From positions 62,001-126,000 of the IMG/VR virus record IMGVR_UViG_3300024503_000015: a stretch of DNA of 64,000 bases. One strand, given 5' to 3'. A program made the translations under genes and the position numbers. Shown piece after piece: positions 306-50,557 of the stretch. How positions within the stretch are numbered: position 1 is the stretch's first letter; each line of letters opens with the position of its first letter. The notes beneath the pieces were generated by a model, which was given only the letters and a program-made list of their open reading frames with translations, ran no database searches and was not told the origin of the DNA.

Positions 306-877
306 TAATATCAGTTGGTGCTATTCCTGTAGGAATATTTGAATGGAAAGAATTTACCGATCACAAAGATGCGATTGTTGATCTATGCCTTAGAGAAGAA
401 AAACCTAATGTCATAGAATCTAATATTGCACCTAAGGTTAAAACAAACTTATGGGAATCTAATTTTAGTTTCTTACAGCAACATTCAGAGTTAAAAGCTC
501 TTGATACTTGGTTAAACAGTACTACTAGAGACTTTGTTAATGCTGTAAACAAATCGGATTATCATATAGCAATTACAGAAAGTTGGGCACACGTTACTCG
601 TCCATTGGGTCAGCATGAACCACATAGACACCCAGACTCTACCTGGAGTGGTATATTTTATATAGATGCCGATGAGCCGCAGAGCGGAAATAATATATGG
701 TTTAATATGTTTAAGTTGCCCGAACGTCCCGGGCTAGAATTTTTTGATGAAAATTTCTCTGCAGAATTTATTCCTGGACGCTTAATAATATTCCCAAGTA
801 TAATGTTGCATTATGCAAAACCATACTTGGGAAAAGATAGAAGAATATTAATTGCGTTTAATAGTGTCTGTGTTTAA
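302..877 (+). CDS. Putative 2OG-Fe(II) oxygenase (TIGR02466-like)
   Basis: ESWA...HEPHRHP..TWSGIFY, PGRLIIFPS.MLH and RILIAFN motifs; likely start is ATG 302, an ATGA overlap with the upstream stop (ORF track starts at 293). Confidence 0.8.
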   Translation: MIISVGAIPVGIFEWKEFTDHKDAIVDLCLREEKPNVIESNIAPKVKTNLWESNFSFLQQHSELKALDTWLNSTTRDFVNAVNKSDYHIAITESWAHVTRPLGQHEPHRHPDSTWSGIFYIDADEPQSGNNIWFNMFKLPERPGLEFFDENFSAEFIPGRLIIFPSIMLHYAKPYLGKDRRILIAFNSVCV

Positions 878-2481: not shown

Positions 2482-3963
2482 TTATCTGTACTCGTAAACT
2501 AAACAAATTCCGGCATATCCGTCTGAGCCGTTGTGGTTACCTGCGCCACCAGGTCCGCCACCTCCAGGTGCTGCCACAGGGTTAAAACTGTTGCCTCCGT
2601 GACGCCCTGCTCCGCCACCTCCAAAGAACGTTGCGCCACCTTCGCCGCTCATACCGCCTTGTTGGTTATTATAGCCCGGTGCGTGTCCGCCGCCGCCGCC
2701 TCCGTATGTATTAATTTGACCGCCTGAACCGATGCCGCCGTGGCCACCGCAGTGGCTCTTATTTTGATTAGCACCGTAGCCTCCAGATGCACTTACATAA
2801 CTACCAAAACTAGTTGTGCCACCCTGTCCACTGAATCCAAAGTAATAACCGCCACCAGATCCGCCGCCTACTGTGATAGAAACACTGGAAATATTTGTAG
2901 CGTCAATCCAACGCTCGGCATATCCGCCACCACCACCACTTTCGTGATAGCCACGGCCGCCGCCGCCACCGCCTACACAGATAACACGTAAGCGTTGTAC
3001 ATCGGATCCGCTCTTAGTATAGGTACTGTTTCCAGTATAACTGTATAAGTTCTTTAATGTACCGTTGTACTGGTCAGCATATCCTTTGACAGCCGCTTCT
3101 GTTGGTAGCGTAGAGTTACTGTTTCCGCTGAGAGAAGTACTTGTAGTTACTCCAGTTACCTGAGAGTTTCCGCCTCTGATCCATACTTTAACGTGACTAA
3201 TGTAAAATGCTTCGTCACTTTGTGCTTGATCCAATCCTGTATACATCTTAGCAATGATTGTAGATGTAGTATGTCCAAACCATCCTGTGGTAACTTTTGA
3301 ATAACCGTTAAATCTTGCAGAGTTTTCTGATTGATTACCACCCCAGGGTAAGTAAGAATACCAACGACCACCGAACCATGTATGTTCAGTGCTATTATAT
3401 GTGGCCACATTATATGGCGCAGTTGAATATTGTTTATTCCAAGATGCCATTGTAACATCTGCGCCTGAAGAGTTTTGTAAATAAATTACGTTTTGTTCAG
3501 CGTCCCATGAGTCTACTTGATGAATCAAACATTCAAATTTAATTTCTGTATGAGTCGGTACACCTGTTAGTGTCAACTGATAAGTTCTTGCACTACCGCC
3601 CCAGCCGTGTACTGTTACGTTTCCTAGTCCAGCACAGTCTGTCATGTTATATGTTTCTGTGTAGTTCCAGTTTCCTGTATAGGCACTAGCGTTACCGCCT
3701 TCATCGTAGTACAAACGTTCGCCAGCATTAAGAGTTAATGATGTTAAGTTTACACTAGTAGCAGTTGTAGTTACACCGGACATCGTACCCCCGGTGATTG
3801 CCACGCTGTTACTTTCCATAGCACCTGCAGATCCAATAATTTTTACTGGAGTGTTTGATGCATTACCAATCCACATTTGGTTGGCGCTGGTATTATATGC
3901 TACCTCGCCTTGTACCAATGAAGATGGTGTTGTTGTTCCACGTTTTACTTTAATTACTGGCAT
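2482..3963 (-). CDS. Glycine-rich tail fibre tip / adhesin-like protein, paralog 2 (extra central domain)
   Basis: Same N- and C-terminal modules as its neighbours plus a ~185-aa aromatic-rich insertion. Confidence 0.65.
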   Translation of the reverse strand: MPVIKVKRGTTTPSSLVQGEVAYNTSANQMWIGNASNTPVKIIGSAGAMESNSVAITGGTMSGVTTTATSVNLTSLTLNAGERLYYDEGGNASAYTGNWNYTETYNMTDCAGLGNVTVHGWGGSARTYQLTLTGVPTHTEIKFECLIHQVDSWDAEQNVIYLQNSSGADVTMASWNKQYSTAPYNVATYNSTEHTWFGGRWYSYLPWGGNQSENSARFNGYSKVTTGWFGHTTSTIIAKMYTGLDQAQSDEAFYISHVKVWIRGGNSQVTGVTTSTSLSGNSNSTLPTEAAVKGYADQYNGTLKNLYSYTGNSTYTKSGSDVQRLRVICVGGGGGGRGYHESGGGGGYAERWIDATNISSVSITVGGGSGGGYYFGFSGQGGTTSFGSYVSASGGYGANQNKSHCGGHGGIGSGGQINTYGGGGGGHAPGYNNQQGGMSGEGGATFFGGGGAGRHGGNSFNPVAAPGGGGPGGAGNHNGSDGYAGICLVYEYR

Positions 3964-41393: not shown

Positions 41394-41400
41394 TATTTAT
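41394..41400 (-). promoter_or_regulatory. Late promoter (ATAAATA) overlapping the portal stop codon
   Basis: TAAATA core 5 nt upstream of ATG 41388. Confidence 0.6.
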
Positions 41401-43106
41401 GCTGGTGGAGCGGCTGGCGCGGGAGCGGCACCTGGTGCTGGCGCACCGCCTTCTGCTCCTGCTTCAGGTGCCATACCTTCGGGTGCTGGTGTTTCTCCTG
41501 CCATAGCACTAGCATCTGCGGCAATGCCCGTTGGGCTTACACCTGCTGTACGCAATTCTCCTGCGGCATCCATTGCGTTAGACTTGGCCATACCGCTTTC
41601 TTCTTTCCACAGACGTTCGTTTTCTGCTAAGTCTTCGTCTGTCATACCTAAGAAACGTTTTAGTGCAAACCGTTTAGCAATAAATGGCAATGCTACTACC
41701 TGTGCAAAAGTACTGATACGTTGATTGTCTAACTCTGCTTGACGATATGCGGCAAAGTTTTGTGGACTTTGGAAACGAATATCAAACAAACTAAAGTCAA
41801 TGTTTACACCTTTGTTATACAAGAATAATTTAAATTCTGTATCAAATGTACTGATCATTAACGTTTGTAAACGCTCGCAATATTTGTTAAAACGTAGTTC
41901 TTGAATGTATGCTGTACCTACACGTCCATCATTAAATGCCGCTTGACTGTCATCTGCGCCTGTAGGCAAGTAACTGCTAGGAATACGTAGAGCTCGCATT
42001 AACTTGTTAGTAAAATACTTTAAGTCGTCGATTTCGCCCAGGTTAGTACCGCCCGGTAGCGTTTCAACTTTACTTCCACGACCTTCTGCTGTCTGTGGAA
42101 AGAAGTAGTCTTCATTGATAGACAACGGATTGTAAGCACTATCAATAGCACTGCCACCGCCTGTACTACTAGGAATACGTCTTTGATGAATCTCATTTTT
42201 AACTCTTTCAACAAAGCTCATGGCCAAGTGACTAGGCATATTGCCTACGTCAATGTAGAAAATTCTACGCTCTGGAGCACGTTGAATACGATAGATAATA
42301 ATAGCATCTTCCAGTAATTCTTTCTGTTTGTAAACTTTAAAAACAGATTCTAACAGCGAATTACCAAAAGGATAATTGTTGTCTAAGCCTTCACTTAGAC
42401 TAAGATGTACAACGTGTTTAGCATCAATAGCAAATTCATTTTGACTTTTGCTAAAACGTGTTCCTGACTGCTGAGGATATGATCCTGTCATACCGCGAGC
42501 ACCGCTGCCGCCTTGTGTATAAGCGGCACCACCAGGCTGTTGATTTTGTGTATTAGGATTAATCTGTGTTACAACTAAATCCTGTAAATTAATGTTTAAG
42601 TCGCGGATAACGTATTGTTCTGGCTTCTTGCCTTCGCTTTCGTTAACAATAATCTTTACAACTTTACCCGGATCAACGTAATACCATTTTTGTGTTTCTG
42701 GATCGCGTACAAAGAATCCGTCGCCGTATTTGAACAAGTTACGTGCAATACGGAACATACGTGTATCAAGTTTTTGTAACTTAGTCCACTGTTGTAGGTA
42801 TTCCTTTAAAATTTTAATTTCAGAATTTGTAGCACGATTTCTAAATTGTAATGTAAACGGTGTACCGTTTTCTTTATTTTTCTGTGTGCAAAACTCTGCT
42901 AGAATGTCCAATGCGGCATTAACTTCGCTGTCCCAATCCATGGTGTCGTACTGCATATAACGCTCAACACGATTTGGACTACCAGTGTAAACATCTGGAA
43001 GATAGGAACTATAGTTGGATCGTGCAGGACCAGGCTTTCCGCCTGCGCCGGATATCGGGCTAACGTTGCCTGTTGTTACTGGAGAGAAATGTCTTTTCCA
43101 ACTCAT
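41397..43106 (-). CDS. gp20: Portal vertex protein (T4 gp20 family)
   Basis: LLEDAIIIYRI.RAPERRIFYIDVGNMP, EDYFFP...GRGS.VETLPGG.NLG.IDD..YF..KL..AL.IP.S. Confidence 0.95.
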   Translation of the reverse strand: MSWKRHFSPVTTGNVSPISGAGGKPGPARSNYSSYLPDVYTGSPNRVERYMQYDTMDWDSEVNAALDILAEFCTQKNKENGTPFTLQFRNRATNSEIKILKEYLQQWTKLQKLDTRMFRIARNLFKYGDGFFVRDPETQKWYYVDPGKVVKIIVNESEGKKPEQYVIRDLNINLQDLVVTQINPNTQNQQPGGAAYTQGGSGARGMTGSYPQQSGTRFSKSQNEFAIDAKHVVHLSLSEGLDNNYPFGNSLLESVFKVYKQKELLEDAIIIYRIQRAPERRIFYIDVGNMPSHLAMSFVERVKNEIHQRRIPSSTGGGSAIDSAYNPLSINEDYFFPQTAEGRGSKVETLPGGTNLGEIDDLKYFTNKLMRALRIPSSYLPTGADDSQAAFNDGRVGTAYIQELRFNKYCERLQTLMISTFDTEFKLFLYNKGVNIDFSLFDIRFQSPQNFAAYRQAELDNQRISTFAQVVALPFIAKRFALKRFLGMTDEDLAENERLWKEESGMAKSNAMDAAGELRTAGVSPTGIAADASAMAGETPAPEGMAPEAGAEGGAPAPGAAPAPAAPPA

Positions 43107-43118
43107 TATTAATTCCTA

Positions 43119-45488
43119 TTATGCACTATTATTTGAAGTTTGTCTAGTGTATTTGGCTGTCTTGCTCAAATAATCCACAGCGTCTGATTGATGTGAGACT
43201 AATTGACTCATATTCATATTTAACTGATTTAACAGGTCTACCATCTCTTTGCTGGACGCATCGGATACTTTTACGTTTCCAGGTGCTCCTTCTTTTTGCT
43301 CAGACTTCATAGAGCTCTTGATGGTTTCGCTTAATTTATTAATGTTATTATTCAGTTGATCTAAATTAGTGTTATTCAAATCTTTAAATGCACTAGTTGT
43401 TGTAGTAATTTCTTCTCTAAGATTTTTTAATTTAATAACACCTGCATCGATACTTGAACCCACTGCCTCTGGGAACATTAATTTTGAATAATCTACATCC
43501 TTTAATGCCGTTTTAAGTGCATTAACTTCTTGATTTAACTTTGCTACAGGTTCGGCAGCATTTGTCTCTGGAGGTTTTGGTGCATTTGCTTTTGGTATTT
43601 CTGCACCAGGTACTGTATTTTTAGTATTTTCCGTTTGTGCATTAGCGGCCGCATTTGTTTTTGTCTTTAAAAAGTCTGGAGTTAGAAAATCAACAACTTC
43701 ATCTTTATAAATGATTAATCCTGCTGTTGTTGCTATTGCCCAGGCCCATGGATTCTTTATAGTGGAAACAATTTTTTCTAGTTTTCCGGCTTTTGCAACA
43801 TCTTCTGCGGCTTCTGCGGCTGCTCCTGGCTTAACTGGTTCTCCTTTAGGAGTTTTAGGTTCACCACCTTTAGGTTCACCGCCACCTTTTTTCATTTCTT
43901 CATATTTTTTATAATCCATGCCAGCGGCTTTTGCACCAGCATAACCTATTGCAGTACCTACACCAGCCTTAATAAGAGCATCTGCAATCTCTTTACCTAG
44001 TGCGGCTCCAAACAATACTGGAATTCTTGCGGCTGGATCTAACTTAGCAAATTTTTCAGCGGCTGCTTCTGCACCACTTGCCGCCGATTTTAATCCAGTT
44101 GCGGTTAAATCTAGTACGCCACTTTCAATAAATGACTTCTTAAATGAATTTTGTACATTAGTTAATGTCTGATCTAAACCTGCTACTGCTCTTGTTGGGT
44201 CTGTCTTAGATGCAGCCAGACGTTTTTCTTGTTCTTCCTTGGCCATTGCGGCTGCTTTTTGCGAGTCGCCCATGCCTTGTAATACTGCTTTACCTAACAT
44301 TGGAGTCATTTGACCCATAGTTGCCATTGCGGCGGCTGTTCTTCTTTCGCCTTCGCTGATATTTTCGCTGGCTTTGGCGGCTTTACTAAATCCAGCGTTC
44401 ATATCGTCGACAGCAGACTTAGATCCGTTAAAAATTTCTCGGCCCATTTTACTAGCATCAACGCCTGCACTTTGCATTGTCAATGCAAATTGTCTTGCTT
44501 CAGCAGTTACAGCAACACCACCGCCAGCAATAATATCTTTAAAGCCTGCGGCCATTTTACCAGTTGGATCTAGTTGTTCTAACTGTTTAATTTTAGCATT
44601 AACTGCCGCCTGTTGGTCTGCATCTAATTTGCCTAATGCTAATTTCATTCTAGCATCACGTTGAGATGATTTATTGGCTTCATCTATCTGTTGTCTAGAT
44701 AATCCTGTTGCCTTTGATAGTCTGTCTAGTTCTTCGTTATATTTTTCTTGACCTGCAACAATTTCATCAGTGCTCATCTTTGACAAGCGACCGTTGCGTT
44801 GTTGTTGTTCCATGTAACTAGCATTATATGTTGCTAGTTCATCCATACTAAATCCAAGCGCGGCAAATTTTTGACCGCTCTGTGCCATAAACTTGCCTTG
44901 TGTTTCAGCAAACTTAGTAGCACCAGCAGTGGCAGATCCAAACGCCATAGCCAGCGATTGGCTGTTTTCTTTTACAGTTTTTCCAAAAATTTCTAAAGGA
45001 AGTCTTGCTTCACCTGCTGATAGTTGTGCTTGTAACAATGAATCACCTAAGTCAATACCAGATCCACTTAGTGTTCTAAAAATTTGTATTTGATCTTCTA
45101 ATGTTCCGCCAAATTGCTGAACTACATCGCTAACGCCCTTGATGTTTGCGCCGGGCATTTGTGCCAGTACACCAGAAAAATCTTTAATTGTAGGAGTAGT
45201 ATTTGAAAATGTTTTAGCAAATGAGTCTGCACCAAGAGATACAGCATCTCCTGCTAGTTTCATTCGTGCCTTATATTCTTTTTCAGTTTCAGCACCTTTT
45301 CGCATTTGCTCAGCCCGAGCATCATTGTCTCCTGCGCCACCGCCACCGCCGGGCGTGGCACCAGGTTTTCCGCCTGCAGGTATTCCGCTTTTATTAATTG
45401 CCGCAAGTATCTGTCTAAGAGTCGAGTCTTCGGCAGCGTTTTCTACAATAACTGTTCCTACTCCAGGAACTATGGCTTTTACTGACAT
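43119..45488 (-). CDS. Tape measure protein (putative)
   Basis: 789-aa Ala/Gln/Met-rich helical protein, Y..ELD.LSK.TG.SR motif, adjacent to a frameshifted chaperone gene. Confidence 0.7.
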   Translation of the reverse strand: MSVKAIVPGVGTVIVENAAEDSTLRQILAAINKSGIPAGGKPGATPGGGGGAGDNDARAEQMRKGAETEKEYKARMKLAGDAVSLGADSFAKTFSNTTPTIKDFSGVLAQMPGANIKGVSDVVQQFGGTLEDQIQIFRTLSGSGIDLGDSLLQAQLSAGEARLPLEIFGKTVKENSQSLAMAFGSATAGATKFAETQGKFMAQSGQKFAALGFSMDELATYNASYMEQQQRNGRLSKMSTDEIVAGQEKYNEELDRLSKATGLSRQQIDEANKSSQRDARMKLALGKLDADQQAAVNAKIKQLEQLDPTGKMAAGFKDIIAGGGVAVTAEARQFALTMQSAGVDASKMGREIFNGSKSAVDDMNAGFSKAAKASENISEGERRTAAAMATMGQMTPMLGKAVLQGMGDSQKAAAMAKEEQEKRLAASKTDPTRAVAGLDQTLTNVQNSFKKSFIESGVLDLTATGLKSAASGAEAAAEKFAKLDPAARIPVLFGAALGKEIADALIKAGVGTAIGYAGAKAAGMDYKKYEEMKKGGGEPKGGEPKTPKGEPVKPGAAAEAAEDVAKAGKLEKIVSTIKNPWAWAIATTAGLIIYKDEVVDFLTPDFLKTKTNAAANAQTENTKNTVPGAEIPKANAPKPPETNAAEPVAKLNQEVNALKTALKDVDYSKLMFPEAVGSSIDAGVIKLKNLREEITTTTSAFKDLNNTNLDQLNNNINKLSETIKSSMKSEQKEGAPGNVKVSDASSKEMVDLLNQLNMNMSQLVSHQSDAVDYLSKTAKYTRQTSNNSA

Positions 45489-45512
45489 AATTTTTCCGTC
45501 AAAAACTGCGTA

Positions 45513-45520
45513 TATAAATA
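45513..45520 (+). promoter_or_regulatory. Late promoter (TATAAATA) for the gp26-like gene
   Basis: Exact T4 late consensus; GGAG RBS downstream. Confidence 0.75.
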
Positions 45521-45539
45521 TAATGACACAGCAGTATAT

Positions 45540-45546
45540 TATTTAG
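45540..45546 (-). promoter_or_regulatory. Late promoter (CTAAATA) for the tape measure-portal unit
   Basis: TAAATA core on the minus strand upstream of ATG 45488. Confidence 0.6.
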
Positions 45547-45561
45547 TTGGAGTAAAAACAC

Positions 45562-46428
45562 ATGGAAAATCAAGTAGCAGTACCGCAAAACCCGTTGAAG
45601 AAGTACTTTAGACAACCGAAGCTCTATGTTCGTTTGCCTAGTTCTGGTAATTTTTATCCACCAGGCACGTTAGAACCTACACAAAATATGGAGTTTCCAG
45701 TTTATGCTATGACTGCTAGAGATGAAATTTCTATTAAAACACCAGACGCATTGTTAAATGGTCAAAGTACTGTTGATGTTATTCAAAGTTGTATGCCTAA
45801 TATTAAAAATGCCTGGGCAATTCCTAGTATTGATATTGATGCTATATTAATTGCTATTCGTATTGCAACATATGGCGAACAAATTGATGTAGATATTGCT
45901 ATTCCAAACATATCAGAAACAAAAACGTATACTACTGACCTACGATTAGCGTTAGATAAACTGTTAGATGCTACATTTGATCCAGAAGTTCGAATTAATG
46001 ATGAATTAACTGCATTTTTACGTCCATTATCCTATGAAGAATTTACTAAAAGTTCTTTAAAAAGTTTAGAAGAACAACGAATTTTTACTATTGTTAACAG
46101 TCAAGAACTAACAGAAGAACAAAAGATTGCTCAATTTAATAAGAGTTTTAAAGCATTAACTGAAATTACCATGAGATCAGTGGCCAATGGATTAGTCAAA
46201 GTTGTTACGCCTGAAGGCGAAGTAAGTGATCCAGCATTTATTAAAGAGTTTATCGATAATGCTGACAAAGAATTTTATACTAAAATCATCGATCACTTGG
46301 AAAAACAACGCATTAAGTTTCAAATGCCGTCGTTTAAAATTCAAACTACAGCAGAAGAGCAAGCTCAAGGTGCTCCTGCTGAATTTGAAACTCCTATAGG
46401 ACTAGACGCTTCAAATTTTTTCGCGTAA
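45562..46428 (+). CDS. gp26: Baseplate hub assembly chaperone (T4 gp26-like)
   Basis: NPL..YFRQP...LPS.G.FY, V..MTA.DE, D.DAILIAIR.ATYGE motifs. Confidence 0.75.
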   Translation: MENQVAVPQNPLKKYFRQPKLYVRLPSSGNFYPPGTLEPTQNMEFPVYAMTARDEISIKTPDALLNGQSTVDVIQSCMPNIKNAWAIPSIDIDAILIAIRIATYGEQIDVDIAIPNISETKTYTTDLRLALDKLLDATFDPEVRINDELTAFLRPLSYEEFTKSSLKSLEEQRIFTIVNSQELTEEQKIAQFNKSFKALTEITMRSVANGLVKVVTPEGEVSDPAFIKEFIDNADKEFYTKIIDHLEKQRIKFQMPSFKIQTTAEEQAQGAPAEFETPIGLDASNFFA

Positions 46429-46652
46429 AGCTCTTCAGCCTAACACTCGAAGACGCACTAAGAGTAGTTGAGGGGCTAGATAAAGAAGCAAAGTCCATAA
46501 GAACCGAATTGTTTAAATTGTGCTGGTATATGAGAGGTAGCATCACCATAGATGACGCATTTGCATTATCCTATGAAGATCGTGAAATCATATCGAATAT
46601 TATCAAAGAGAATTTAGAAACTACTAAGAAATCAGGATTACCCTTTTTCTAA
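46419..46652 (+). CDS. -1 frameshift extension of the gp26-like chaperone (gp51-like segment, 77 codons)
   Basis: Slippery heptamer T TTT TTC at 46416-46422 just before the 0-frame stop; -1 frame open to TAA 46650-46652 (FRVKLF...LCWYMRG...KENLETTKKSGLPFF) with no RBS-linked start at its 5' end. Confidence 0.7.
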   Translation, partial: FRVKLFSLTLEDALRVVEGLDKEAKSIRTELFKLCWYMRGSITIDDAFALSYEDREIISNIIKENLETTKKSGLPFF

Positions 46653-46659
46653 TACTTCA

Positions 46660-46745
46660 AGATTCACTGCGTTCATCTGTTCATCGCTTCGCTCGAACTA
46701 TTTGTTTTATTTTAATTATAGAGCATTATTAAGTGCGAAGCACTT
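46660..46745. other. Cluster of ssDNA-type mini-hairpins flanking an AT-rich tract (possible origin/priming site)
   Basis: Minus strand GTTC-GA-GC-GAA-GC-GA-T-GAAC and AGAT-GA-AC-GCA-GT-GA-ATCT; plus strand AAGTGC-GAA-GCACTT; 46699-46720 has one G in 22 nt. Confidence 0.5.
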
Positions 46746-47095
46746 TAGCATTATCCAGATTGTTCAGTCACACTTCGCCCGCACAGGGCAAAGTTAAAAA
46801 CATTATCCGAGTTGCACAATGTCACACAGCGTTAGAGCATTACAGTGGCGGTTGTCCGGTACCACGAGCTCCGTCTTATCACAACGGCGGTAAACAAATA
46901 TACGCTATCATACTTGCTTACGTGAGGTTTTTCTCCTCTCCTTGAGCCTTTTCTTCTTAAAACAGCAAAACCGCGGCAATTTGCGATCCTCGTCCTGTTA
47001 AGGATAGTTGCTGAGTACTCTTAACGGCAAGAGAATTCCGTCCCTGCGACCCGAGGTCCAGGTATAGAGCGCACGAATTTAGCCTGCGCTAGCCA
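46746..47095 (-). ncRNA. Candidate large structured non-coding RNA downstream of GIY-YIG nuclease
   Basis: At least nine hairpins; about 47% GC by hand count over 46741-47100, clearly above the flanking genes; several stems need G-U pairs that work only on the minus strand. Confidence 0.6.
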
Positions 47096-47539
47096 TTAAC
47101 CGTTTGATTTTGCCTGTGCTTGTTCTAATAAACGCTGTCTTAGTATATTTGATCCGCCTACTCTAACATTAATAATACCGTTATAGTAGTCGTCAGTTTC
47201 TAAAACCCTACGTTCGAACTGCTCTCTTGCCTCTAGATAAGACATTTCTGCCTTGGATTTGCAAAAATAAAGTATTTCTCTTGTGAATTTTTCTGGACCT
47301 AGTGCGTGGACGTCTGCTTGTAATCTCTCAGATGAGCCCCAATATTCGCGCCAATCGCTTTCTACTGTGCTACGTCTTTTGAGTTTTTTGCCTTTGAGTG
47401 GTGGTTTTGTACGCTTAAACTGTGCTAGTTTTTTGCCTATATATTTCTGTCCAGATTGGTTGTTAGTGATGAGATAAACAAAGCCTATAACGCCTTCGGG
47501 TATTTCTTCAACTAATACATTTTGATAGTGCCACGACAT
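47096..47539 (-). CDS. GIY-YIG family endonuclease (standalone, short)
   Basis: GFVYLITN...KYIGKK, Y.GSS, F.REIL..C, E...Q and YYN motifs; likely start ATG 47539 (MSWHY). Confidence 0.8.
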   Translation of the reverse strand: MSWHYQNVLVEEIPEGVIGFVYLITNNQSGQKYIGKKLAQFKRTKPPLKGKKLKRRSTVESDWREYWGSSERLQADVHALGPEKFTREILYFCKSKAEMSYLEAREQFERRVLETDDYYNGIINVRVGGSNILRQRLLEQAQAKSNG

Positions 47540-47554
47540 GCACATATATACCAG

Positions 47555-47782
47555 TTACTCTGAATCATCTTGTGTCGTTTTGGCCTTTTTGTTTAATCGC
47601 CGCTGTGCCTGTATTTCCATTCGCCTTTTTGTGCATAAATCGCGTATGTCTCGCAGATATTCGCGAGCCTGTTGACTGGATGCAAAGTATCCATAACGTT
47701 CAAATCGTTCGTTCCAGCGTGAATATTCGATAAACGCTTTAACTAACTGGTCGTGAGTGTCGTCTTTGATGTCGTCAGTCAT
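47555..47782 (-). CDS. Small basic helical protein (Hc1/histone-H1-like phage family, tentative)
   Basis: E.F..G...S..AR..L.DI..L...RR.EIQ pattern. Confidence 0.45.
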   Translation of the reverse strand: MTDDIKDDTHDQLVKAFIEYSRWNERFERYGYFASSQQAREYLRDIRDLCTKRRMEIQAQRRLNKKAKTTQDDSE

Positions 47783-49556
47783 AAACTTCTATGTCGTTAG
47801 CATAACTTGTGAACCCGTTTTCTTTTATTACCTTGAGCACGTTGTTCACTCGACCCACTAATTCATCCCTATGAGAAATTAGATAGATGTTCTTATTACG
47901 TTCTCTGCCCATTTTCTTCAAAACACCCAGAGAGTTTTCAACGCCATTGGCGTCCATACCGCTATCGATAAGTTCATCTATGAATAAGAGATTAATGTTC
48001 TGGTATAATGATTCCCAGACATCGCGGAACGCCCACGACAATCCTAAGATTAAGCGATTCCTTTCTCCTCGTGACAGGTTATCAAAATCTAAGTCCTGCC
48101 CGAGTTGGGTTATTTCTACCGTTAGGTCATTTTGGAATACAACGGTGTGAGGTAGACCCACCTTATCAAGGTAATAAGTCAGACGGTTATTCAAGTAAGC
48201 AAGATTTTGATCTATAATCTTCTTACGAATAAACGAATCTTTTGAAGTTAACAGTTTTAATAAAAACTCTTGATGCTCTTTCATTAGATTTAAACTGTTA
48301 ACAGAGTCCCACGCTACTTCTTGAAGTGCAGTATTCTCTAATTCAGTAATCTGCTCTTGGTAAGTATCGCGTTCTTCTTGTTTATTTTTTAATTGTACAG
48401 CAAGGCTATCTAAATTAGACCTATGATTATAGGCTTCGTTTAGTGTGTCATAGAAAGTCTGTGGACGACCGTTGATGTCTCCAATAGACTCAAGTTCCTT
48501 TATAATCAACTCGAGATCTCCCGCTACCTTGGACAAGTATGTATCTGCATCAGCGAGATTTTTCTCTGCCGCTTTAATCATTTCTTCATGTTTATGATCG
48601 TGCAGTTCTTGTTCACACGCAGGACAAGTCTTGTGTTCTAGTCGTTCTACTTCTTTCTGATACTTTCGTACAGTTTTATCAGCCTGCATCACAGCAGTTT
48701 CTAAGGTAGCCTTTTCTTTGTTAAGACTTTTAATTCTAGCCGCTTGTTCGTCATATACTTTTAACTTTTCATGCTGTGCAATTTCTGCATCAATATCCAC
48801 GCCAGCCAGCTCATCTATGGCTTTTTGTATTTTACTAATGTCTGCATCTTTACTACGTTGCCAAGCCGCTTGTTTTAATTTTAAACTGTCGATGCTTTCT
48901 TGAATTTTATCATTGCTTTTCTTTACAGCATCAATTCTAGCACTTTCCTGTGTAATTTCTTCTTTAGTAATACGTACTTGCTCTTTGAGAGTTTCTGCTT
49001 TTTCACTTAAAAGTGTAATACCTAGTAATTGTTCAATAATTACACGCTGGTCGTTGGCCCGCATACTAAGAAATGGCTCAGTATAAGTGTTCAATGCAAC
49101 AATGTGCTTGAACATATCATGACTCATGCCTAGTAATTCATCAATATCTTTCTGTGTTTCTCGACTATCGCCTTGACCTTCGTCATCTACATCTGCATTT
49201 TCTTGTTCTTGCTCGTCGACATAGAATTTTAATATGTTAGGTTTGCGCCCACGTTCGATTCTGTATAAACGTCCGTCTTTTTCAAACTCAACAGTAACTA
49301 ACATATTCTTAGAATTAATCTTGTTAATAAGATTATCCTTCTTAATGTTAGTCAACGCCTGTCCGTAAAGCCCATAACTTAGTGCATTTACGATAGTGGT
49401 CTTACCCGTGCCGTTTCGAGAGCCGGAATCGTCACCTCCTTGGTCCAAGTTCTCGCCTAAGACGAGGGTAAGTTGTTCTTTACCAAAATCTACTGCCTGT
49501 GTAGCATTACCTACACTCATGAAATTTTTAACTGTTAAGTCTTTTATTCTAATCAT
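47775..49556 (-). CDS. gp46: Recombination endonuclease ATPase subunit (gp46/SbcC/Rad50)
   Basis: KNFMSVGN, Walker A NGTGKTT, CPAC zinc hook, LSRGE signature, Walker B LLFIDE, ISH. Confidence 0.95.
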   Translation of the reverse strand: MIRIKDLTVKNFMSVGNATQAVDFGKEQLTLVLGENLDQGGDDSGSRNGTGKTTIVNALSYGLYGQALTNIKKDNLINKINSKNMLVTVEFEKDGRLYRIERGRKPNILKFYVDEQEQENADVDDEGQGDSRETQKDIDELLGMSHDMFKHIVALNTYTEPFLSMRANDQRVIIEQLLGITLLSEKAETLKEQVRITKEEITQESARIDAVKKSNDKIQESIDSLKLKQAAWQRSKDADISKIQKAIDELAGVDIDAEIAQHEKLKVYDEQAARIKSLNKEKATLETAVMQADKTVRKYQKEVERLEHKTCPACEQELHDHKHEEMIKAAEKNLADADTYLSKVAGDLELIIKELESIGDINGRPQTFYDTLNEAYNHRSNLDSLAVQLKNKQEERDTYQEQITELENTALQEVAWDSVNSLNLMKEHQEFLLKLLTSKDSFIRKKIIDQNLAYLNNRLTYYLDKVGLPHTVVFQNDLTVEITQLGQDLDFDNLSRGERNRLILGLSWAFRDVWESLYQNINLLFIDELIDSGMDANGVENSLGVLKKMGRERNKNIYLISHRDELVGRVNNVLKVIKENGFTSYANDIEVYD

Positions 49557-50557
49557 AGGTTATTATAAATCGCGAGTAATACTTTAGGATCGTATGTGTC
49601 GCTTTGTATGCTGGCAATTTGATTACTAACAATTTGATCTACACTTTCAAACTGTTGGACATCAAGGTTAGTGTTAATTTCTACGTCTTTCTTCTCAGGA
49701 ATTAATGTAAGTTCTCTGATATTTTCCTGAGCCATAAATGTTTCTTTAATAAAACTGGCTTCTTCGAAACTAATATCAATATCAATACCTACACGTAGAT
49801 ATGTTTTAGGAAGAATTAGTGTTTCGGATTCGTCAATAAGTTGACTCAGTTTTACAGTCTTAAACTTAGGAGCATCGTTCCAAACTTTATACACAGGCTT
49901 CTTTCCGTGTTCTAAAATCATCATGCCTCTGTCGTCGTCCCAAGCATCTGCATAGTTGTGCGGAAACGCATTACCAATGTAAACAATATTTTCTTTTGCT
50001 TGGCGTTTATGAAAGTGCCCGCTGAATACATATTCAGGGTTCTTAAAGTTGCTGGCCTGTAACTCACCGTGGTCCGGCATCTGCACCATTGCGTTCATCA
50101 TAAACAACGGAAGTTCAAAGTGTCCAAACACATAACGACTTTTTAACTTTTCCATCTTTTTCCACTCATCGCCTACTAACCAAGGAACTAGTGTAACATC
50201 ATCTATGGTAGTAATTTCGCTGATAACAGTTACTCCTGGAATATGTCTGCCCCAGTCAACTGAGTGTACATCACGCTTATCCTTATAGTATAAGTCGTGA
50301 TTGCCTGGAAAGAAGTAAAACTGATCAAATGCCTTGCCCAGTTTTTCTAAACAGCGGATTGAACTGTGCATAGTCAACATATTAAGACTGTTTCGATTGT
50401 GATGCCAATCGCCTAGGAAGATGCCAGTATCACATCCTTCCTTTTTAGCCTCAGCAATAAACCAATCTACGAATTCTTCGCAGTCCTGATTATGTGTACT
50501 AGAGTTCGATTTTAATCCAAAGTGTATGTCTGTAAAACACGCAACTTTTTTAAACAT
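49553..50557 (-). CDS. gp47: Recombination endonuclease nuclease subunit (gp47/SbcD/Mre11)
   Basis: DIHFG, GDWHH, GNHD, GHFE and SGHFH metallophosphoesterase motifs. Confidence 0.95.
   Translation of the reverse strand: MFKKVACFTDIHFGLKSNSSTHNQDCEEFVDWFIAEAKKEGCDTGIFLGDWHHNRNSLNMLTMHSSIRCLEKLGKAFDQFYFFPGNHDLYYKDKRDVHSVDWGRHIPGVTVISEITTIDDVTLVPWLVGDEWKKMEKLKSRYVFGHFELPLFMMNAMVQMPDHGELQASNFKNPEYVFSGHFHKRQAKENIVYIGNAFPHNYADAWDDDRGMMILEHGKKPVYKVWNDAPKFKTVKLSQLIDESETLILPKTYLRVGIDIDISFEEASFIKETFMAQENIRELTLIPEKKDVEINTNLDVQQFESVDQIVSNQIASIQSDTYDPKVLLAIYNNL

What the first reader, a model, noticed from the sequence alone, without database searches (positions are those of the whole stretch)
46653..46850. 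Origin-like end of the same locus: repeats, AT-rich tract and primosome-site-like ssDNA hairpins
Seen: past the RNA-like region come four TAATG(C/T)T repeats on the minus strand (plus-strand CATTA near 46724, 46749, 46801, 46838), a hairpin AAGTGC-GAA-GCACTT (46731-46745), a 22-nt tract with one G (46699-46720), then two adjacent minus-strand hairpins of the same design: stem, GA, 2 bp, GNA triloop, 2 bp, GA, stem (46679-46698 and 46660-46678). Known: GNA triloops such as d(GCGAAGC) and tandem sheared G-A pairs are exceptionally stable in single-stranded DNA. As I recall it, the ColE1/pBR322 primosome assembly region contains GAGCGCAGCGA downstream of, and on the same strand as, the structured RNA II primer; here the motifs are GAGCGAAGCGA and GAACGCAGTGA. 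Inference: the order structured RNA, unwinding element, pas-like hairpins on the displaced strand resembles a ColE1-type RNA-primed (R-loop) origin in a large phage, placed next to gp46/47 and a nuclease that could nick or process it.
Basis: partly seen in the sequence, partly recalled or inferred. Interest (0 to 1): 0.78.

Follow-up and report, generated by a model that had tools for sequence, protein, structure and literature searches.

The report
Conserved phage hairpin-and-repeat module
The flagged 200 bases are the best-conserved end of a ~445-base non-coding element that occurs once per genome in many freshwater T4-like phages; its hairpins and twin repeats are real and fit a DNA replication-start signal fed by a structured RNA slightly better than plain RNA, but neither reading is proven.

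Summary
Comparison with about 100 distinct related phage loci sorts them. Conserved: two of the four TAATGYT repeats, hairpin 46731-46745, and the GA-GC-G(N)NA-GC-GA design of hairpin 46679-46698. Specific to this lineage or chance: the other two repeats, the sequence of the AT-rich tract, and the GA pairs of hairpin 46660-46678.

The interval is the 3' module (46649-46826, minus strand) of a ~445-nt non-coding element. The 5' third of that element is Rfam RF01718 (Polynucleobacter-1 RNA). The element always follows gp47-gp46-p75-GIY-YIG.

The module holds two 12-nt boxes with identical variable bases in nearly every locus, four covarying hairpins almost free of wobble pairs, and an A-rich linker of variable length. 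Hairpins c and d carry DNA-mini-hairpin-type loops on the RNA-sense strand. Hairpin b carries one on the opposite strand.

Best reading (0.4): a transcription-fed replication-initiation module. Main rival (0.3): a purely RNA 3' domain. No promoter, GC-skew shift or initiator was found. The ColE1/PriA reading is partly supported. Moderately high interest.

The parts
46649..46826 (-). 3' module as a whole, matched by my covariance model R1. It contains almost all of the finding's interval.
   Evidence: The only hit in the 64-kb window: 151.6 bits, E 1.4e-35. Exactly one hit in each of the 99 searched sources that have the module, and none in the Melnitz genome. 92.6% of cells are paired against 30-44% with slid partners; 24 of 27 pairs show changes on both sides.
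46802..46813 (-). Box 1 (minus strand AACUCGGAUAAU).
   Evidence: Its variable bases equal those of box 2 in 53/54 loci and in 79/79 loci of a second, overlapping retrieval. Mutual information with box 2 is 1.0 bit, and no complementary column exists.
46773..46793 (-). Hairpin a (CUUUGCCC / GGGCGAAG).
   Evidence: 5 of 7 pairs change on both sides and 93.8% of cells are paired. 18 G-U cells against 8 A-C cells.
46750..46761 (-). Box 2 (minus strand AAUCUGGAUAAU), preceded by the invariant GUGUGACUGAAC spacer.
   Evidence: It differs from box 1 only by C/U exchanges (ACUC versus AUCU).
46731..46745 (.). Hairpin b. The loop is UUC on the minus strand and GAA on the plus strand (GCGAAGC on plus).
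   Evidence: 5 of 5 pairs covary and 97.9% of cells are paired. The loop reads G-N-A on the plus strand in 94/99 loci and on the minus strand in 0/99. GCGAAGC is present on the plus strand in 81/99. z -4.9 and -2.9 when folded as DNA.
46699..46730 (-).
   Evidence: 8-69 nt long across loci. Composition on the sense strand: A 50%, T 29%, G 11%, C 9%. The 14 nt before hairpin c are 74% purine on average. Some loci carry an extra AT-rich hairpin here.
46679..46698 (-). Hairpin c: outer stem, GA, GC, GAA loop, GC, GA, one extra base, outer stem.
   Evidence: GAGCG..AGCGA in 95/99 loci, GCG-N(N)-AGC in 89/99, G..A loop on the minus strand in 98/99. The two outer-stem pairs next to the GA motif covary as UA/CG/GC.
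46660..46678 (-). Hairpin d: 8 bp, with two G.A/A.G mismatches in this lineage only.
   Evidence: 8 of 8 pairs change on both sides, 97% of cells are paired, and there is 1 G-U cell in 792. Loops read G..A on the minus strand in 67/99 loci. TAAATA follows within 40 nt in 91/99 relatives but not in the window. A U-tract of 4 or more in 8 nt occurs in only 13/99.
46826..46838 (-). 3' strands of two long-range RNA helices that tie the finding's upper edge to the upstream RNA fold.
   Evidence: 46826 and 46831 pair with 46908 and 46903 in the loop of the central hairpin (TA/AT/TG and GC/AT). 46835-36 pair with 46871-70 (five pair types).
46846..46919 (-). Central RNA domain: a long covarying hairpin (about 46892-46919), the GUGG/CCAC hairpin (46846-64), and GAGC at 46868-71.
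   Evidence: G-U pairs reach 10-20% at several positions, and only in the minus-strand sense.
46960..47094 (-). Rfam RF01718 (Polynucleobacter-1 RNA), the 5' domain of the element.
   Evidence: 119.3 bits against a gathering score of 37, E 2.4e-26. The same position, directly after the GIY-YIG stop codon, in 19 of 36 IMG/VR loci scanned.
47096..47545 (-). GIY-YIG nuclease-domain-only protein (149 aa), the upstream neighbour on the same strand.
   Evidence: Pfam SegE_GIY-YIG 3.5e-34. Best fold match is the I-TevI catalytic domain. Upstream of the module in 69/69 loci retrieved by the RNA pattern.

Best explanation
The interval is the 3' module of a ~445-nt non-coding element (46649-47094, minus strand) that sits at the end of the gp47-gp46-p75-GIY-YIG transcription unit.

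I think the module is a cis-acting DNA initiation site fed by the upstream structured transcript. Proposed steps:
1. Transcription from the minus-sense operon runs through the pseudoknotted RNA domain into the module.
2. The A/purine-rich RNA stays annealed to, or opens, the linker DNA.
3. The displaced RNA-sense strand folds into the mini-hairpins c and d (and a). The opposite strand folds hairpin b on the other side of the linker.
4. These SSB-resistant, fork-like hairpins mark where helicase and primase start DNA synthesis.
5. The two identical boxes are iteron-like recognition sites for an unidentified factor.

Shown here: the anatomy, the conservation, single-strand pairing, which strand each loop is selected on, one copy per genome, and the fixed gene order.

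Inferred, not shown: transcription through the module, the R-loop, priming, and any role for the boxes.
For: 1. The module is real and deeply conserved. There is one copy per locus in 99 sources, strong covariation, and GIY-YIG identity in the same loci falls to 49%.
2. Hairpin cores fit the DNA mini-hairpin consensus GCGNAGC/GCGNNAGC with C-G closure. That review reports the motif as frequent at phage replication-initiation sites such as G4, St-1 and alpha3, and a related mini-hairpin in RSF1010 ssiA (PMC13037366). Here it is met by hairpin c in 89/99 loci and by hairpin b on the opposite strand in 81/99.
3. About a third of the G-N-N-A tetraloops have a pyrimidine at position 3, so they are not GNRA loops. 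Hairpin d has GNA triloops in 33/99 loci.
4. Hairpin b's loop is selected on the strand opposite to the RNA (94/99 against 0/99). A sense-RNA-only model does not explain this.
5. Hairpins b and d have almost no wobble pairs (1 cell each in 566 and 792), whereas the upstream RNA helices have 10-20% at several positions.
6. Hairpins b and c flank an A+T-rich linker of variable length.
7. The two boxes co-vary in parallel, with at least 25 state changes on the GIY-YIG tree, as iterons do.
8. ColE1 carries the same GA-GCGNAGC-GA motif on the RNA II strand, about 135 nt past its origin.
9. T4 origins use R-loop primers. T4 oriE combines an early-promoter transcript with 12-nt direct repeats (PMC3016281).
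10. The window's lineage lost the downstream late genes but kept the element intact, so the element is not a leader for those genes.
Against: - No sigma-70-like promoter lies upstream on the minus strand.
- The cumulative GC-skew minimum is at about 52 kb, not 46.7 kb, and genes converge here rather than diverge.
- There are only two boxes. No initiator was found: box type does not track p75 or GIY-YIG residues.
- The T4-type gp41/gp59/gp61 machinery is not known to need hairpin signals (my knowledge).
- Origins are rarely conserved this deeply.
- The elaborate, pseudoknotted and interchangeable 5' domains (three types) have no role in the model.
- G..A loops and tandem G.A pairs are also stable in RNA.
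- Short RNA hairpins in the upstream domain are also poor in G-U pairs.
- Folding of the window alone gives no signal for hairpins c and d.
- No experimental data exist, and no cultured phage carries the element.
Confidence: 0.4

Rival explanations
1. Purely RNA. The module is the 3' domain of one long (~445 nt) structured non-coding RNA, co-transcribed with or processed from the GIY-YIG mRNA. Hairpins a-d are RNA hairpins. The boxes are single-stranded sites for two copies of a protein or a trans RNA. Hairpins c and d protect or form the 3' end.
For: - It is contiguous and co-linear with RF01718 and a central domain that has pseudoknots and sense-only G-U pairs. Two long-range helices reach to 46826-46838, at the module's edge.
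- G..A loops lie on the sense strand in hairpins a, c and d.
- Hairpin a has 18 G-U cells against 8 A-C cells.
- Hairpins c and d are more stable on the sense strand in 46 of 47 loci.
- The linker is purine-rich on the sense strand.
- This is the simplest model: one molecule, one strand.
- The minus-strand fold of 46653-46960 has z = -3.4.
Against: - Hairpin b keeps a U-N-C triloop in the RNA sense. It is not a recognised stable RNA loop as far as I know, and it mirrors a GNA loop on the other strand.
- A third of the tetraloops are G-N-Y-A, not GNRA.
- Hairpins b and d are almost free of wobble pairs.
- No U-tract follows hairpin d in most loci.
- No Rfam family covers the module.
- No partner for the boxes was found.
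Confidence: 0.3
2. Another DNA-level single-strand or structure-specific site, not an origin. Examples: a nicking or cleavage site for the adjacent GIY-YIG nuclease that seeds recombination-dependent replication or loads the gp45 clamp for the late promoter just downstream, or a hairpin-type promoter.
For: - The GIY-YIG gene lies 248-431 nt upstream of box 1 in 69/69 loci. It lacks any DNA-binding domain.
- It sits next to gp46/gp47.
- TAAATA, which resembles a T4 late promoter, lies within 40 nt after hairpin d in 91/99 loci.
- The DNA-type hairpin signatures are as listed for the best explanation.
Against: - More distant GIY-YIG homologues (35-62% identity) in cultured phages sit elsewhere with no long spacer, so the linkage may be conserved gene order only.
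- Box type does not follow GIY-YIG residues.
- No cleavage motif was identified.
- The window's lineage lacks the late promoter yet keeps the element.
Confidence: 0.15
3. Only a terminator or insulator. The hairpins end the early operon and, in this phage, also end the converging gp26-like transcript.
For: - The position is at the end of an operon, 8 nt beyond the converging stop codon at 46650-52.
- A T-rich run follows hairpin c on the plus strand.
- Some relatives have GCUCGUUUUU after hairpin d.
Against: - The terminator scan calls nothing here.
- The plus-strand fold is no better than shuffled sequence (z -0.2).
- 86 of 99 loci have at most 3 U in the 8 nt after hairpin d.
- In relatives the neighbour on that side is a same-strand gene, not a converging one.
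- A terminator does not explain the boxes, hairpins a and b, or the invariant GA-GC..GC-GA core.
Confidence: 0.05

Closest known systems
Rfam RF01718, Polynucleobacter-1 RNA motif (Weinberg et al. 2010, PMC2864571)
   Same: It is the 5' 135 nt of the same element, on the same strand (119 bits). It was reported from freshwater and estuary sequences.
   Different: The family model stops at 46960, and the finding's interval is not covered by any Rfam family. The 3' module also occurs behind two other, unrelated 5' domains. The paper's table marks the motif as a likely RNA and likely cis-regulatory, and describes no phage context or 3' module.
ColE1/pMB1 origin: RNA II pre-primer plus the L-strand primosome assembly site
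   Same: A structured RNA is followed, on the same strand, by a GA-GCGNAGC-GA hairpin motif. In ColE1 this is GAGCGTAGCGA at 1332-42, about 135 nt past the expected origin.
   Different: - No sequence homology beyond the 11-nt motif.
- No RNA I-like antisense RNA and no promoter were found.
- The ColE1 motif has only a 3-bp outer stem.
- PriA dependence is untestable here and not expected for a phage that is expected, as a T4-like phage, to bring its own gp41/gp59/gp61-type primosome.
- The ori position in ColE1 is my inference from the RNA I coordinates and the known ~555-nt length of RNA II.
Primase-dependent single-strand initiation signals: phage G4/St-1/alpha3 complementary-strand origins and RSF1010 ssiA/ssiB (reviewed in PMC13037366)
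   Same: - The same mini-hairpin cores occur here. GCGAAAGC (as in G4) is hairpin c's core in 20 of 99 loci, and GCGTTAGC (as in St-1 and alpha3) in 5.
- The signals lie on opposite strands beside an A+T-rich stretch. For RSF1010 oriV this arrangement is my recollection.
   Different: Those systems belong to ssDNA phages or a plasmid with its own primase. Here the genome is that of a large dsDNA T4-like phage, the signals follow a structured RNA, and no priming has been shown.
Phage T4 origins: oriF/oriG (promoter + DUE, R-loop primer) and oriE (early-promoter transcript + 12-nt direct repeats) (PMC3016281)
   Same: - The phage type is the same.
- Priming would depend on a transcript.
- There is an A+T-rich segment.
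- There are ~12-nt direct repeats, as at oriE.
- The site lies next to late genes.
   Different: - T4 origins share no motifs.
- They are not preceded by a pseudoknotted RNA.
- oriE, oriF and oriG sit at transcriptional divergence and skew shifts. This locus does not.
- Here there are only two repeats.

Membership tests
Rfam RF01718 (Polynucleobacter-1 RNA) | Covariance-model score at or above the gathering threshold (37 bits) over the stretch in question. | tested here: not met
   The model matches 46960-47094 at 119.3 bits. Nothing matches within 46653-46850, even at E up to 1. The finding is adjacent to the family, not part of it as currently defined.
ColE1-type RNA-primed origin | A promoter-driven structured pre-primer RNA transcribed towards the origin. 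| tested here: inconclusive
   A structured RNA domain lies upstream on the same strand. No sigma-70-like promoter was found on the minus strand between 48500 and 46650, apart from a weak match at 48451. The RNA may be the tail of the operon transcript.
ColE1-type RNA-primed origin | An antisense RNA I regulator overlapping the 5' end of the pre-primer. | tested here: not met
   There is no RF00106 or other antisense family hit in 44000-50000. The same scan finds RNA I in ColE1.
ColE1-type RNA-primed origin | A persistent RNA-DNA hybrid cut by RNase H to give the primer. | not testable with these tools
   This needs DRIP or RNase H mapping. The only indirect hint is the purine/A-rich RNA-sense linker.
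ColE1-type RNA-primed origin | A PriA-type primosome assembly site on the displaced strand downstream. | tested here: inconclusive
   The GA-GCGNAGC-GA motif is shared with ColE1 (1332-42) and conserved here in 95/99 loci. PriA recognises structure rather than sequence, and binding cannot be tested.
T4 oriF/oriG-type R-loop origin | A promoter directly upstream of an A+T-rich unwinding element. | tested here: inconclusive
   The A+T-rich linker is present (79% A+T, 8-69 nt). No sigma-70-type promoter is adjacent. Phage-specific promoter types cannot be scanned.
T4 oriE/oriF/oriG-type origin | Location at a switch of transcription direction and of nucleotide skew (true of oriE, oriF and oriG, but not of all T4 origins). 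| tested here: not met
   Genes converge at 46.65 kb. The cumulative GC-skew minimum is near 52 kb.
DNA mini-hairpin / single-strand initiation signal | A GCGNAGC or GCGNNAGC core with a C-G closing pair and a sheared G.A pair. | tested here: met
   Hairpin c in 89/99 loci on the minus strand. Hairpin b has GCGAAGC in 81/99 on the plus strand. Closing C-G in 94-98 of 99. The consensus is from PMC13037366.
DNA mini-hairpin / single-strand initiation signal | Directs priming on SSB-coated single-stranded DNA. | not testable with these tools
   This needs an ssi assay in an origin-defective M13 vector, or in vitro priming.
Iteron-type origin | Several direct repeats bound by a cognate initiator that co-varies with them. 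| tested here: inconclusive
   Two 12-nt boxes co-vary in parallel. There are only two, and neither adjacent protein tracks box type (best normalised mutual information 0.52 for p75 and 0.35 for GIY-YIG, with mixed states).
Intrinsic (rho-independent) terminator | A G+C-rich stem followed by a U-tract (at least 5 U in 8 nt). | tested here: not met
   The terminator scan calls nothing in 46650-46750. The window has 3 U in the 8 nt after hairpin d. Only 1 of 99 loci reaches 5.

The most novel reading that the evidence does not exclude
A large clade of freshwater T4-like phages uses one conserved, RNA-primed origin. A pseudoknotted pre-primer RNA, of which Rfam's Polynucleobacter-1 motif is one of three interchangeable forms, runs into an unwinding tract. 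That tract is flanked by DNA mini-hairpins on opposite strands and preceded by two specificity boxes, which switch state together and often, as an incompatibility or exclusion determinant between co-infecting phages would.
Probability: 0.25. Interest if true: 0.85.

Novelty: new variant of a known kind. Interest (0 to 1): 0.66.

Why it matters
Origins of T4-like phages outside T4 itself are essentially unmapped, and T4's own origins share no motif. A conserved, single-copy, sequence-recognisable initiation module would give a direct handle on replication in abundant uncultured freshwater phages. It would also reassign part of an orphan 'RNA motif' from 2010 to a concrete role.

Even if the element proves to be purely RNA, three results stand:
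- RF01718 is only the 5' third of a much larger element.
- The real conserved core is an undescribed 3' module.
- The module contains two boxes that change in concert, an unexplained constraint that points to an unknown sequence-specific partner.

Tried and rejected
- **Boxes as ends of small ORFs, or as take-off and landing sites for ribosome hopping.** The boxes contain UAA/UGA after an NNA triplet and lie about 50 nt apart, as in T4 gene 60. Rejected: the open frame upstream is 2-51 codons long with no fixed frame, and the spacing is not kept modulo 3.
- **A cis partner for the boxes.** No complementary 6- or 7-mer recurs in any locus. No covarying column exists in the element. Nothing above chance turns up in the 64-kb window.
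- **p75 or GIY-YIG as the factor that sets box specificity.** No residue tracks box type.
- **A sigma-70 promoter or a canonical terminator in the module.** None found.
- **A tmRNA-like RNA.** This idea came from Melnitz's 453-nt tmRNA. ARAGORN and Rfam find none in the window, and Melnitz's is a genuine permuted tmRNA at a different locus.
- **A cultured phage carrying the element.** No DNA match in 50,697 phage records. The module is absent from the whole Melnitz genome.
- **A scan of bacterial genomes.** Whether any cellular genome carries the element is therefore untested.
- **GIY-YIG as a T4 EndoII (denA) orthologue.** In Melnitz the homologue sits right after nrdB, which I recall is where denA sits in T4. 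There is no sequence match to solved structures, and the best fold match is the I-TevI catalytic domain. Left open.
- **RNAalifold's pairing of GAGCUC (46866-71) with hairpin c.** Replaced by the covarying GAGC:GCUC helix at 46868-71 and 46835-38.
- **Structure prediction.** I re-ran it without that row.
Full report
**1. What is in the window**

The window comes from a T4-like phage.
- The portal protein (41397-43106, minus) matches Portal_T4 and is about 50% identical to the portals of jumbo T4 relatives.
- Around the finding the genes run, on the minus strand: gp55-like sigma factor, gp47, gp46, a 75-aa protein (p75), and a 149-aa GIY-YIG protein (47096-47545).
- Then comes 443 nt without a credible ORF (46653-47095).
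- It is met head-on by a plus-strand gp26-like baseplate-hub gene and a small downstream frame that ends at 46652.
- Rfam places RF01718 (Polynucleobacter-1 RNA) at 46960-47094 on the minus strand, at 119 bits, starting 2 nt after the GIY-YIG stop codon. Nothing in Rfam covers the rest.
- There are no tRNA or tmRNA genes.

**2. Checking the observation**

Folding the window alone does not separate the last two hairpins from shuffled sequence, either as DNA (z +0.8) or as plus-strand RNA (z -0.2). The nearest-neighbour tables behind these folds probably carry no special stability terms for sheared G.A pairs or mini-hairpins (my assumption). The test therefore had to be comparative.

**3. Related loci**

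- The GIY-YIG protein has more than 600 relatives in IMG/VR.
- In all 80 loci kept, the order gp47-gp46-(p75)-GIY-YIG is fixed.
- GIY-YIG is more conserved than its neighbours, for example 85% identity against 62% for gp46 and 60% for gp47 in L006. It behaves as a core gene, not as a selfish homing endonuclease.
- The whole ~440 nt after the gene aligns across loci.
- Most relatives have 1-2 kb of same-strand genes between the element and the converging gp26-like gene. Those genes are preceded by TAAATA, which resembles a T4 late promoter. The window's lineage (L001-L003) has lost them, so here the element's end abuts the converging stop codon.
- A reverse search with a pattern from the module found 79 loci with the full module. 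All 69 with enough upstream sequence have GIY-YIG 248-431 nt upstream, with identity down to 49%.
- More distant GIY-YIG homologues (35-62% identical) in cultured phages sit elsewhere and have no long spacer after them: Melnitz, S-SRM01, ACP17 and P-SSM7. The link may therefore be conserved gene order only.
- No record in the phage collection matches the element's DNA. The complete Melnitz genome lacks the module.

**4. Anatomy of the element**

The 5' part varies. RF01718 is present in one group of loci. At least two other, unrelated 5' domains occur in others (L050/L056/L069 and L012).

In RF01718-type loci a central domain follows. It has a 13-bp covarying hairpin and a GUGG/CCAC hairpin. 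Two long-range helices reach into the finding's interval:
- GAGC (46868-71) pairs with GCUC (46835-38).
- The central hairpin's loop pairs with 46826-31, forming a pseudoknot.

These helices carry G-U pairs at 10-20% of sequences at several positions, and only in the minus-strand sense. This part is RNA.

Its order is:
- box 1
- hairpin a
- invariant spacer GUGUGACUGAAC
- box 2
- hairpin b
- A-rich linker
- hairpin c
- hairpin d

My covariance model of the module hits once in the window (46649-46826, 151.6 bits), and once in each of the 99 searched sources that have it. On that alignment 92.6% of cells are paired, against 30-44% when partners are slid. 24 of 27 pairs change on both sides, and no shuffle out of 500 reaches the observed values.

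**5.

- Repeats at 46747 and 46799: conserved, as parts of boxes 2 and 1.
- Repeat at 46722: lies in the variable linker and is not conserved.
- Hairpin b: conserved.
- AT tract: conserved only in composition. On the sense strand it is A 50%, T 29%, G 11% and C 9%, and it is purine-rich just before hairpin c. Length ranges from 8 to 69 nt.
- Hairpin c: its design (outer stem, GA, GC, G..A loop, GC, GA) is kept in 95-98 of 99 loci, and the outer-stem pairs next to the GA motif covary.
- Hairpin d: a plain 8-bp Watson-Crick hairpin in relatives. Its tandem G.A/A.G pairs occur only in the window's lineage.

**6. Unexpected properties**

(a) *The boxes change together.* They carry the same bases at five variable positions in 53/54 and 79/79 loci (two overlapping sets). 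The states seen are GGAUAAU, AGAUAAU, GCAUAAU, GAAUAAU, AGAUGAU, ACAUGAA, ACAUAAU, ACAUGAG and ACAUGAU, plus a base 5 nt upstream.
- The dinucleotide state changes at least 25 times on the GIY-YIG tree. That tree is poorly resolved, so the count is rough.
- The window and L003 differ in both boxes although their GIY-YIG proteins are 99% identical.
- The covariation is parallel, not complementary. No partner exists in the element, within 3 kb either side, or in the window.
- Neither p75 nor GIY-YIG residues track the state.
- The boxes are not ORF ends.

(b) *Loops are selected on different strands.* Hairpins c, d and mostly a have G..A loops on the RNA-sense strand. Hairpin b has a U-N-C triloop there, which is G-N-A on the opposite strand, in 94/99 loci. 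GCGAAGC is present on the plus strand in 81/99.

(c) *Loop types look DNA-like.* About a third of the G-N-N-A tetraloops have a pyrimidine at position 3, and hairpin d has GNA triloops in 33/99 loci. This fits the DNA mini-hairpin consensus GCGNAGC/GCGNNAGC, not GNRA (PMC13037366).

(d) *Wobble pairs are nearly absent.* Hairpins b and d each have 1 G-U cell, in 566 and 792 cells.

**7. Interpretation**

Property (b) is hard to reconcile with a sense-RNA-only module. Properties (c) and (d) lean the same way, but more weakly.

The mini-hairpin review reports these cores as frequent at phage replication-initiation sites: G4 has GCGAAAGC, St-1 and alpha3 have GCGTTAGC, and RSF1010 ssiA carries a related mini-hairpin. 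It also reports that they bind SSB poorly (PMC13037366). Both GCGAAAGC and GCGTTAGC occur as hairpin c cores here.

GAGCGTAGCGA lies on the RNA II strand at 1332-42, followed by GAGGAAGCGG. From the RNA I coordinates (645-749, minus strand) and the known ~555-nt length of RNA II, I infer that this is about 135 nt beyond the origin.

T4 origins work through R-loop primers. T4 oriE combines an early transcript with 12-nt direct repeats of unknown role (PMC3016281).

Together these favour, narrowly, a transcription-fed initiation module with mini-hairpins on the displaced and opposite strands beside an unwinding tract.

**8. Why I am not more confident**

- No promoter, no skew inflection, no divergence of transcription, no antisense regulator and no initiator were found.
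- There are only two boxes.
- The T4-type primosome is not known to need hairpins (my knowledge).
- The depth of conservation is unusual for an origin.
- The pseudoknotted, interchangeable 5' domains are left without a role.
- The module is contiguous with a bona fide RNA fold, and three of its four hairpins have sense-strand loops that are also stable in RNA.
- Short RNA hairpins upstream are also poor in G-U pairs.

My estimates:
- Origin-like module: 0.4
- Pure RNA domain: 0.3
- Another DNA-level site, such as a nuclease or clamp-loading site: 0.15
- Terminator only: 0.05
- Unassigned: the remainder

**9. Membership and novelty**

- The interval is not part of RF01718 as that family is defined.
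- It cannot be filed as a ColE1-type or T4-type origin. The antisense-regulator and skew features were tested and not met, the promoter scans were inconclusive, and the hybrid and priming features cannot be tested here.
- It does meet the sequence definition of DNA mini-hairpins.
- I found no description of the module, or of the concerted boxes, in Rfam or in the searchable literature.
- I rate it a new variant of a known kind, of moderately high interest.

Noticed in passing
window 46413-46652 (+), with the gp26-like ORF 45562-46428: A probable programmed -1 frameshift. The slippery run AAATTTTTTC lies at 46413-22, just before the 0-frame stop at 46426-28. From my reading, the -1 frame stays open to 46652 and contains the conserved 'orf47'. 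TTTTTTC is kept in all 16 related loci I looked at, and several have complementary segments downstream. Melnitz annotates the two pieces as separate genes.
   Followed up: partly
window 47096-47545 (-): This 149-aa GIY-YIG family is widely labelled 'NAD synthetase' in phage records and in PHROGs (phrog_447). It matches Pfam SegE_GIY-YIG (3.5e-34) and folds like the I-TevI catalytic domain. It has no DNA-binding domain and is more conserved than gp46 and gp47 in the same loci.
   Followed up: partly
L050, L056, L069 (about 3440-3760) and L012 (3180-3460): Two other long non-coding 5' domains, unrelated to RF01718 and with no Rfam hit, occupy the same position between GIY-YIG and the shared 3' module.
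   Followed up: no
L018 3688-3720; L004 3705-3775; L051 820-960: Natural variants. L018 lacks box 1 and hairpin a through a deletion. L004 and L051 carry AT-rich insertions between the GUGG/CCAC hairpin and the pseudoknot strand.
   Followed up: no
whole window: The heptamer TAATGYT is 2.4-fold over-represented across the window (94 copies against 40 expected; no shuffle out of 100 reaches it). The cause is unknown and may be codon usage.
   Followed up: no
window 47555-47782 (-): p75 is a small protein that looks helical from its sequence and has a basic C-terminus. It is the fastest-evolving gene of the locus (31-51% identity in most relatives). It has no family hit in Pfam, PHROGs or NCBIfam.
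   Followed up: partly
window 43119-45488 (-): A 789-aa ORF between the portal and gp26-like genes has no hit in Pfam, PHROGs or NCBIfam.
   Followed up: no
L322 45973-46446 (Methylophilales phage Melnitz): The closest cultured relative carries a permuted tmRNA immediately followed by a glutamine-riboswitch hit. It has no copy of the module described here.
   Followed up: partly
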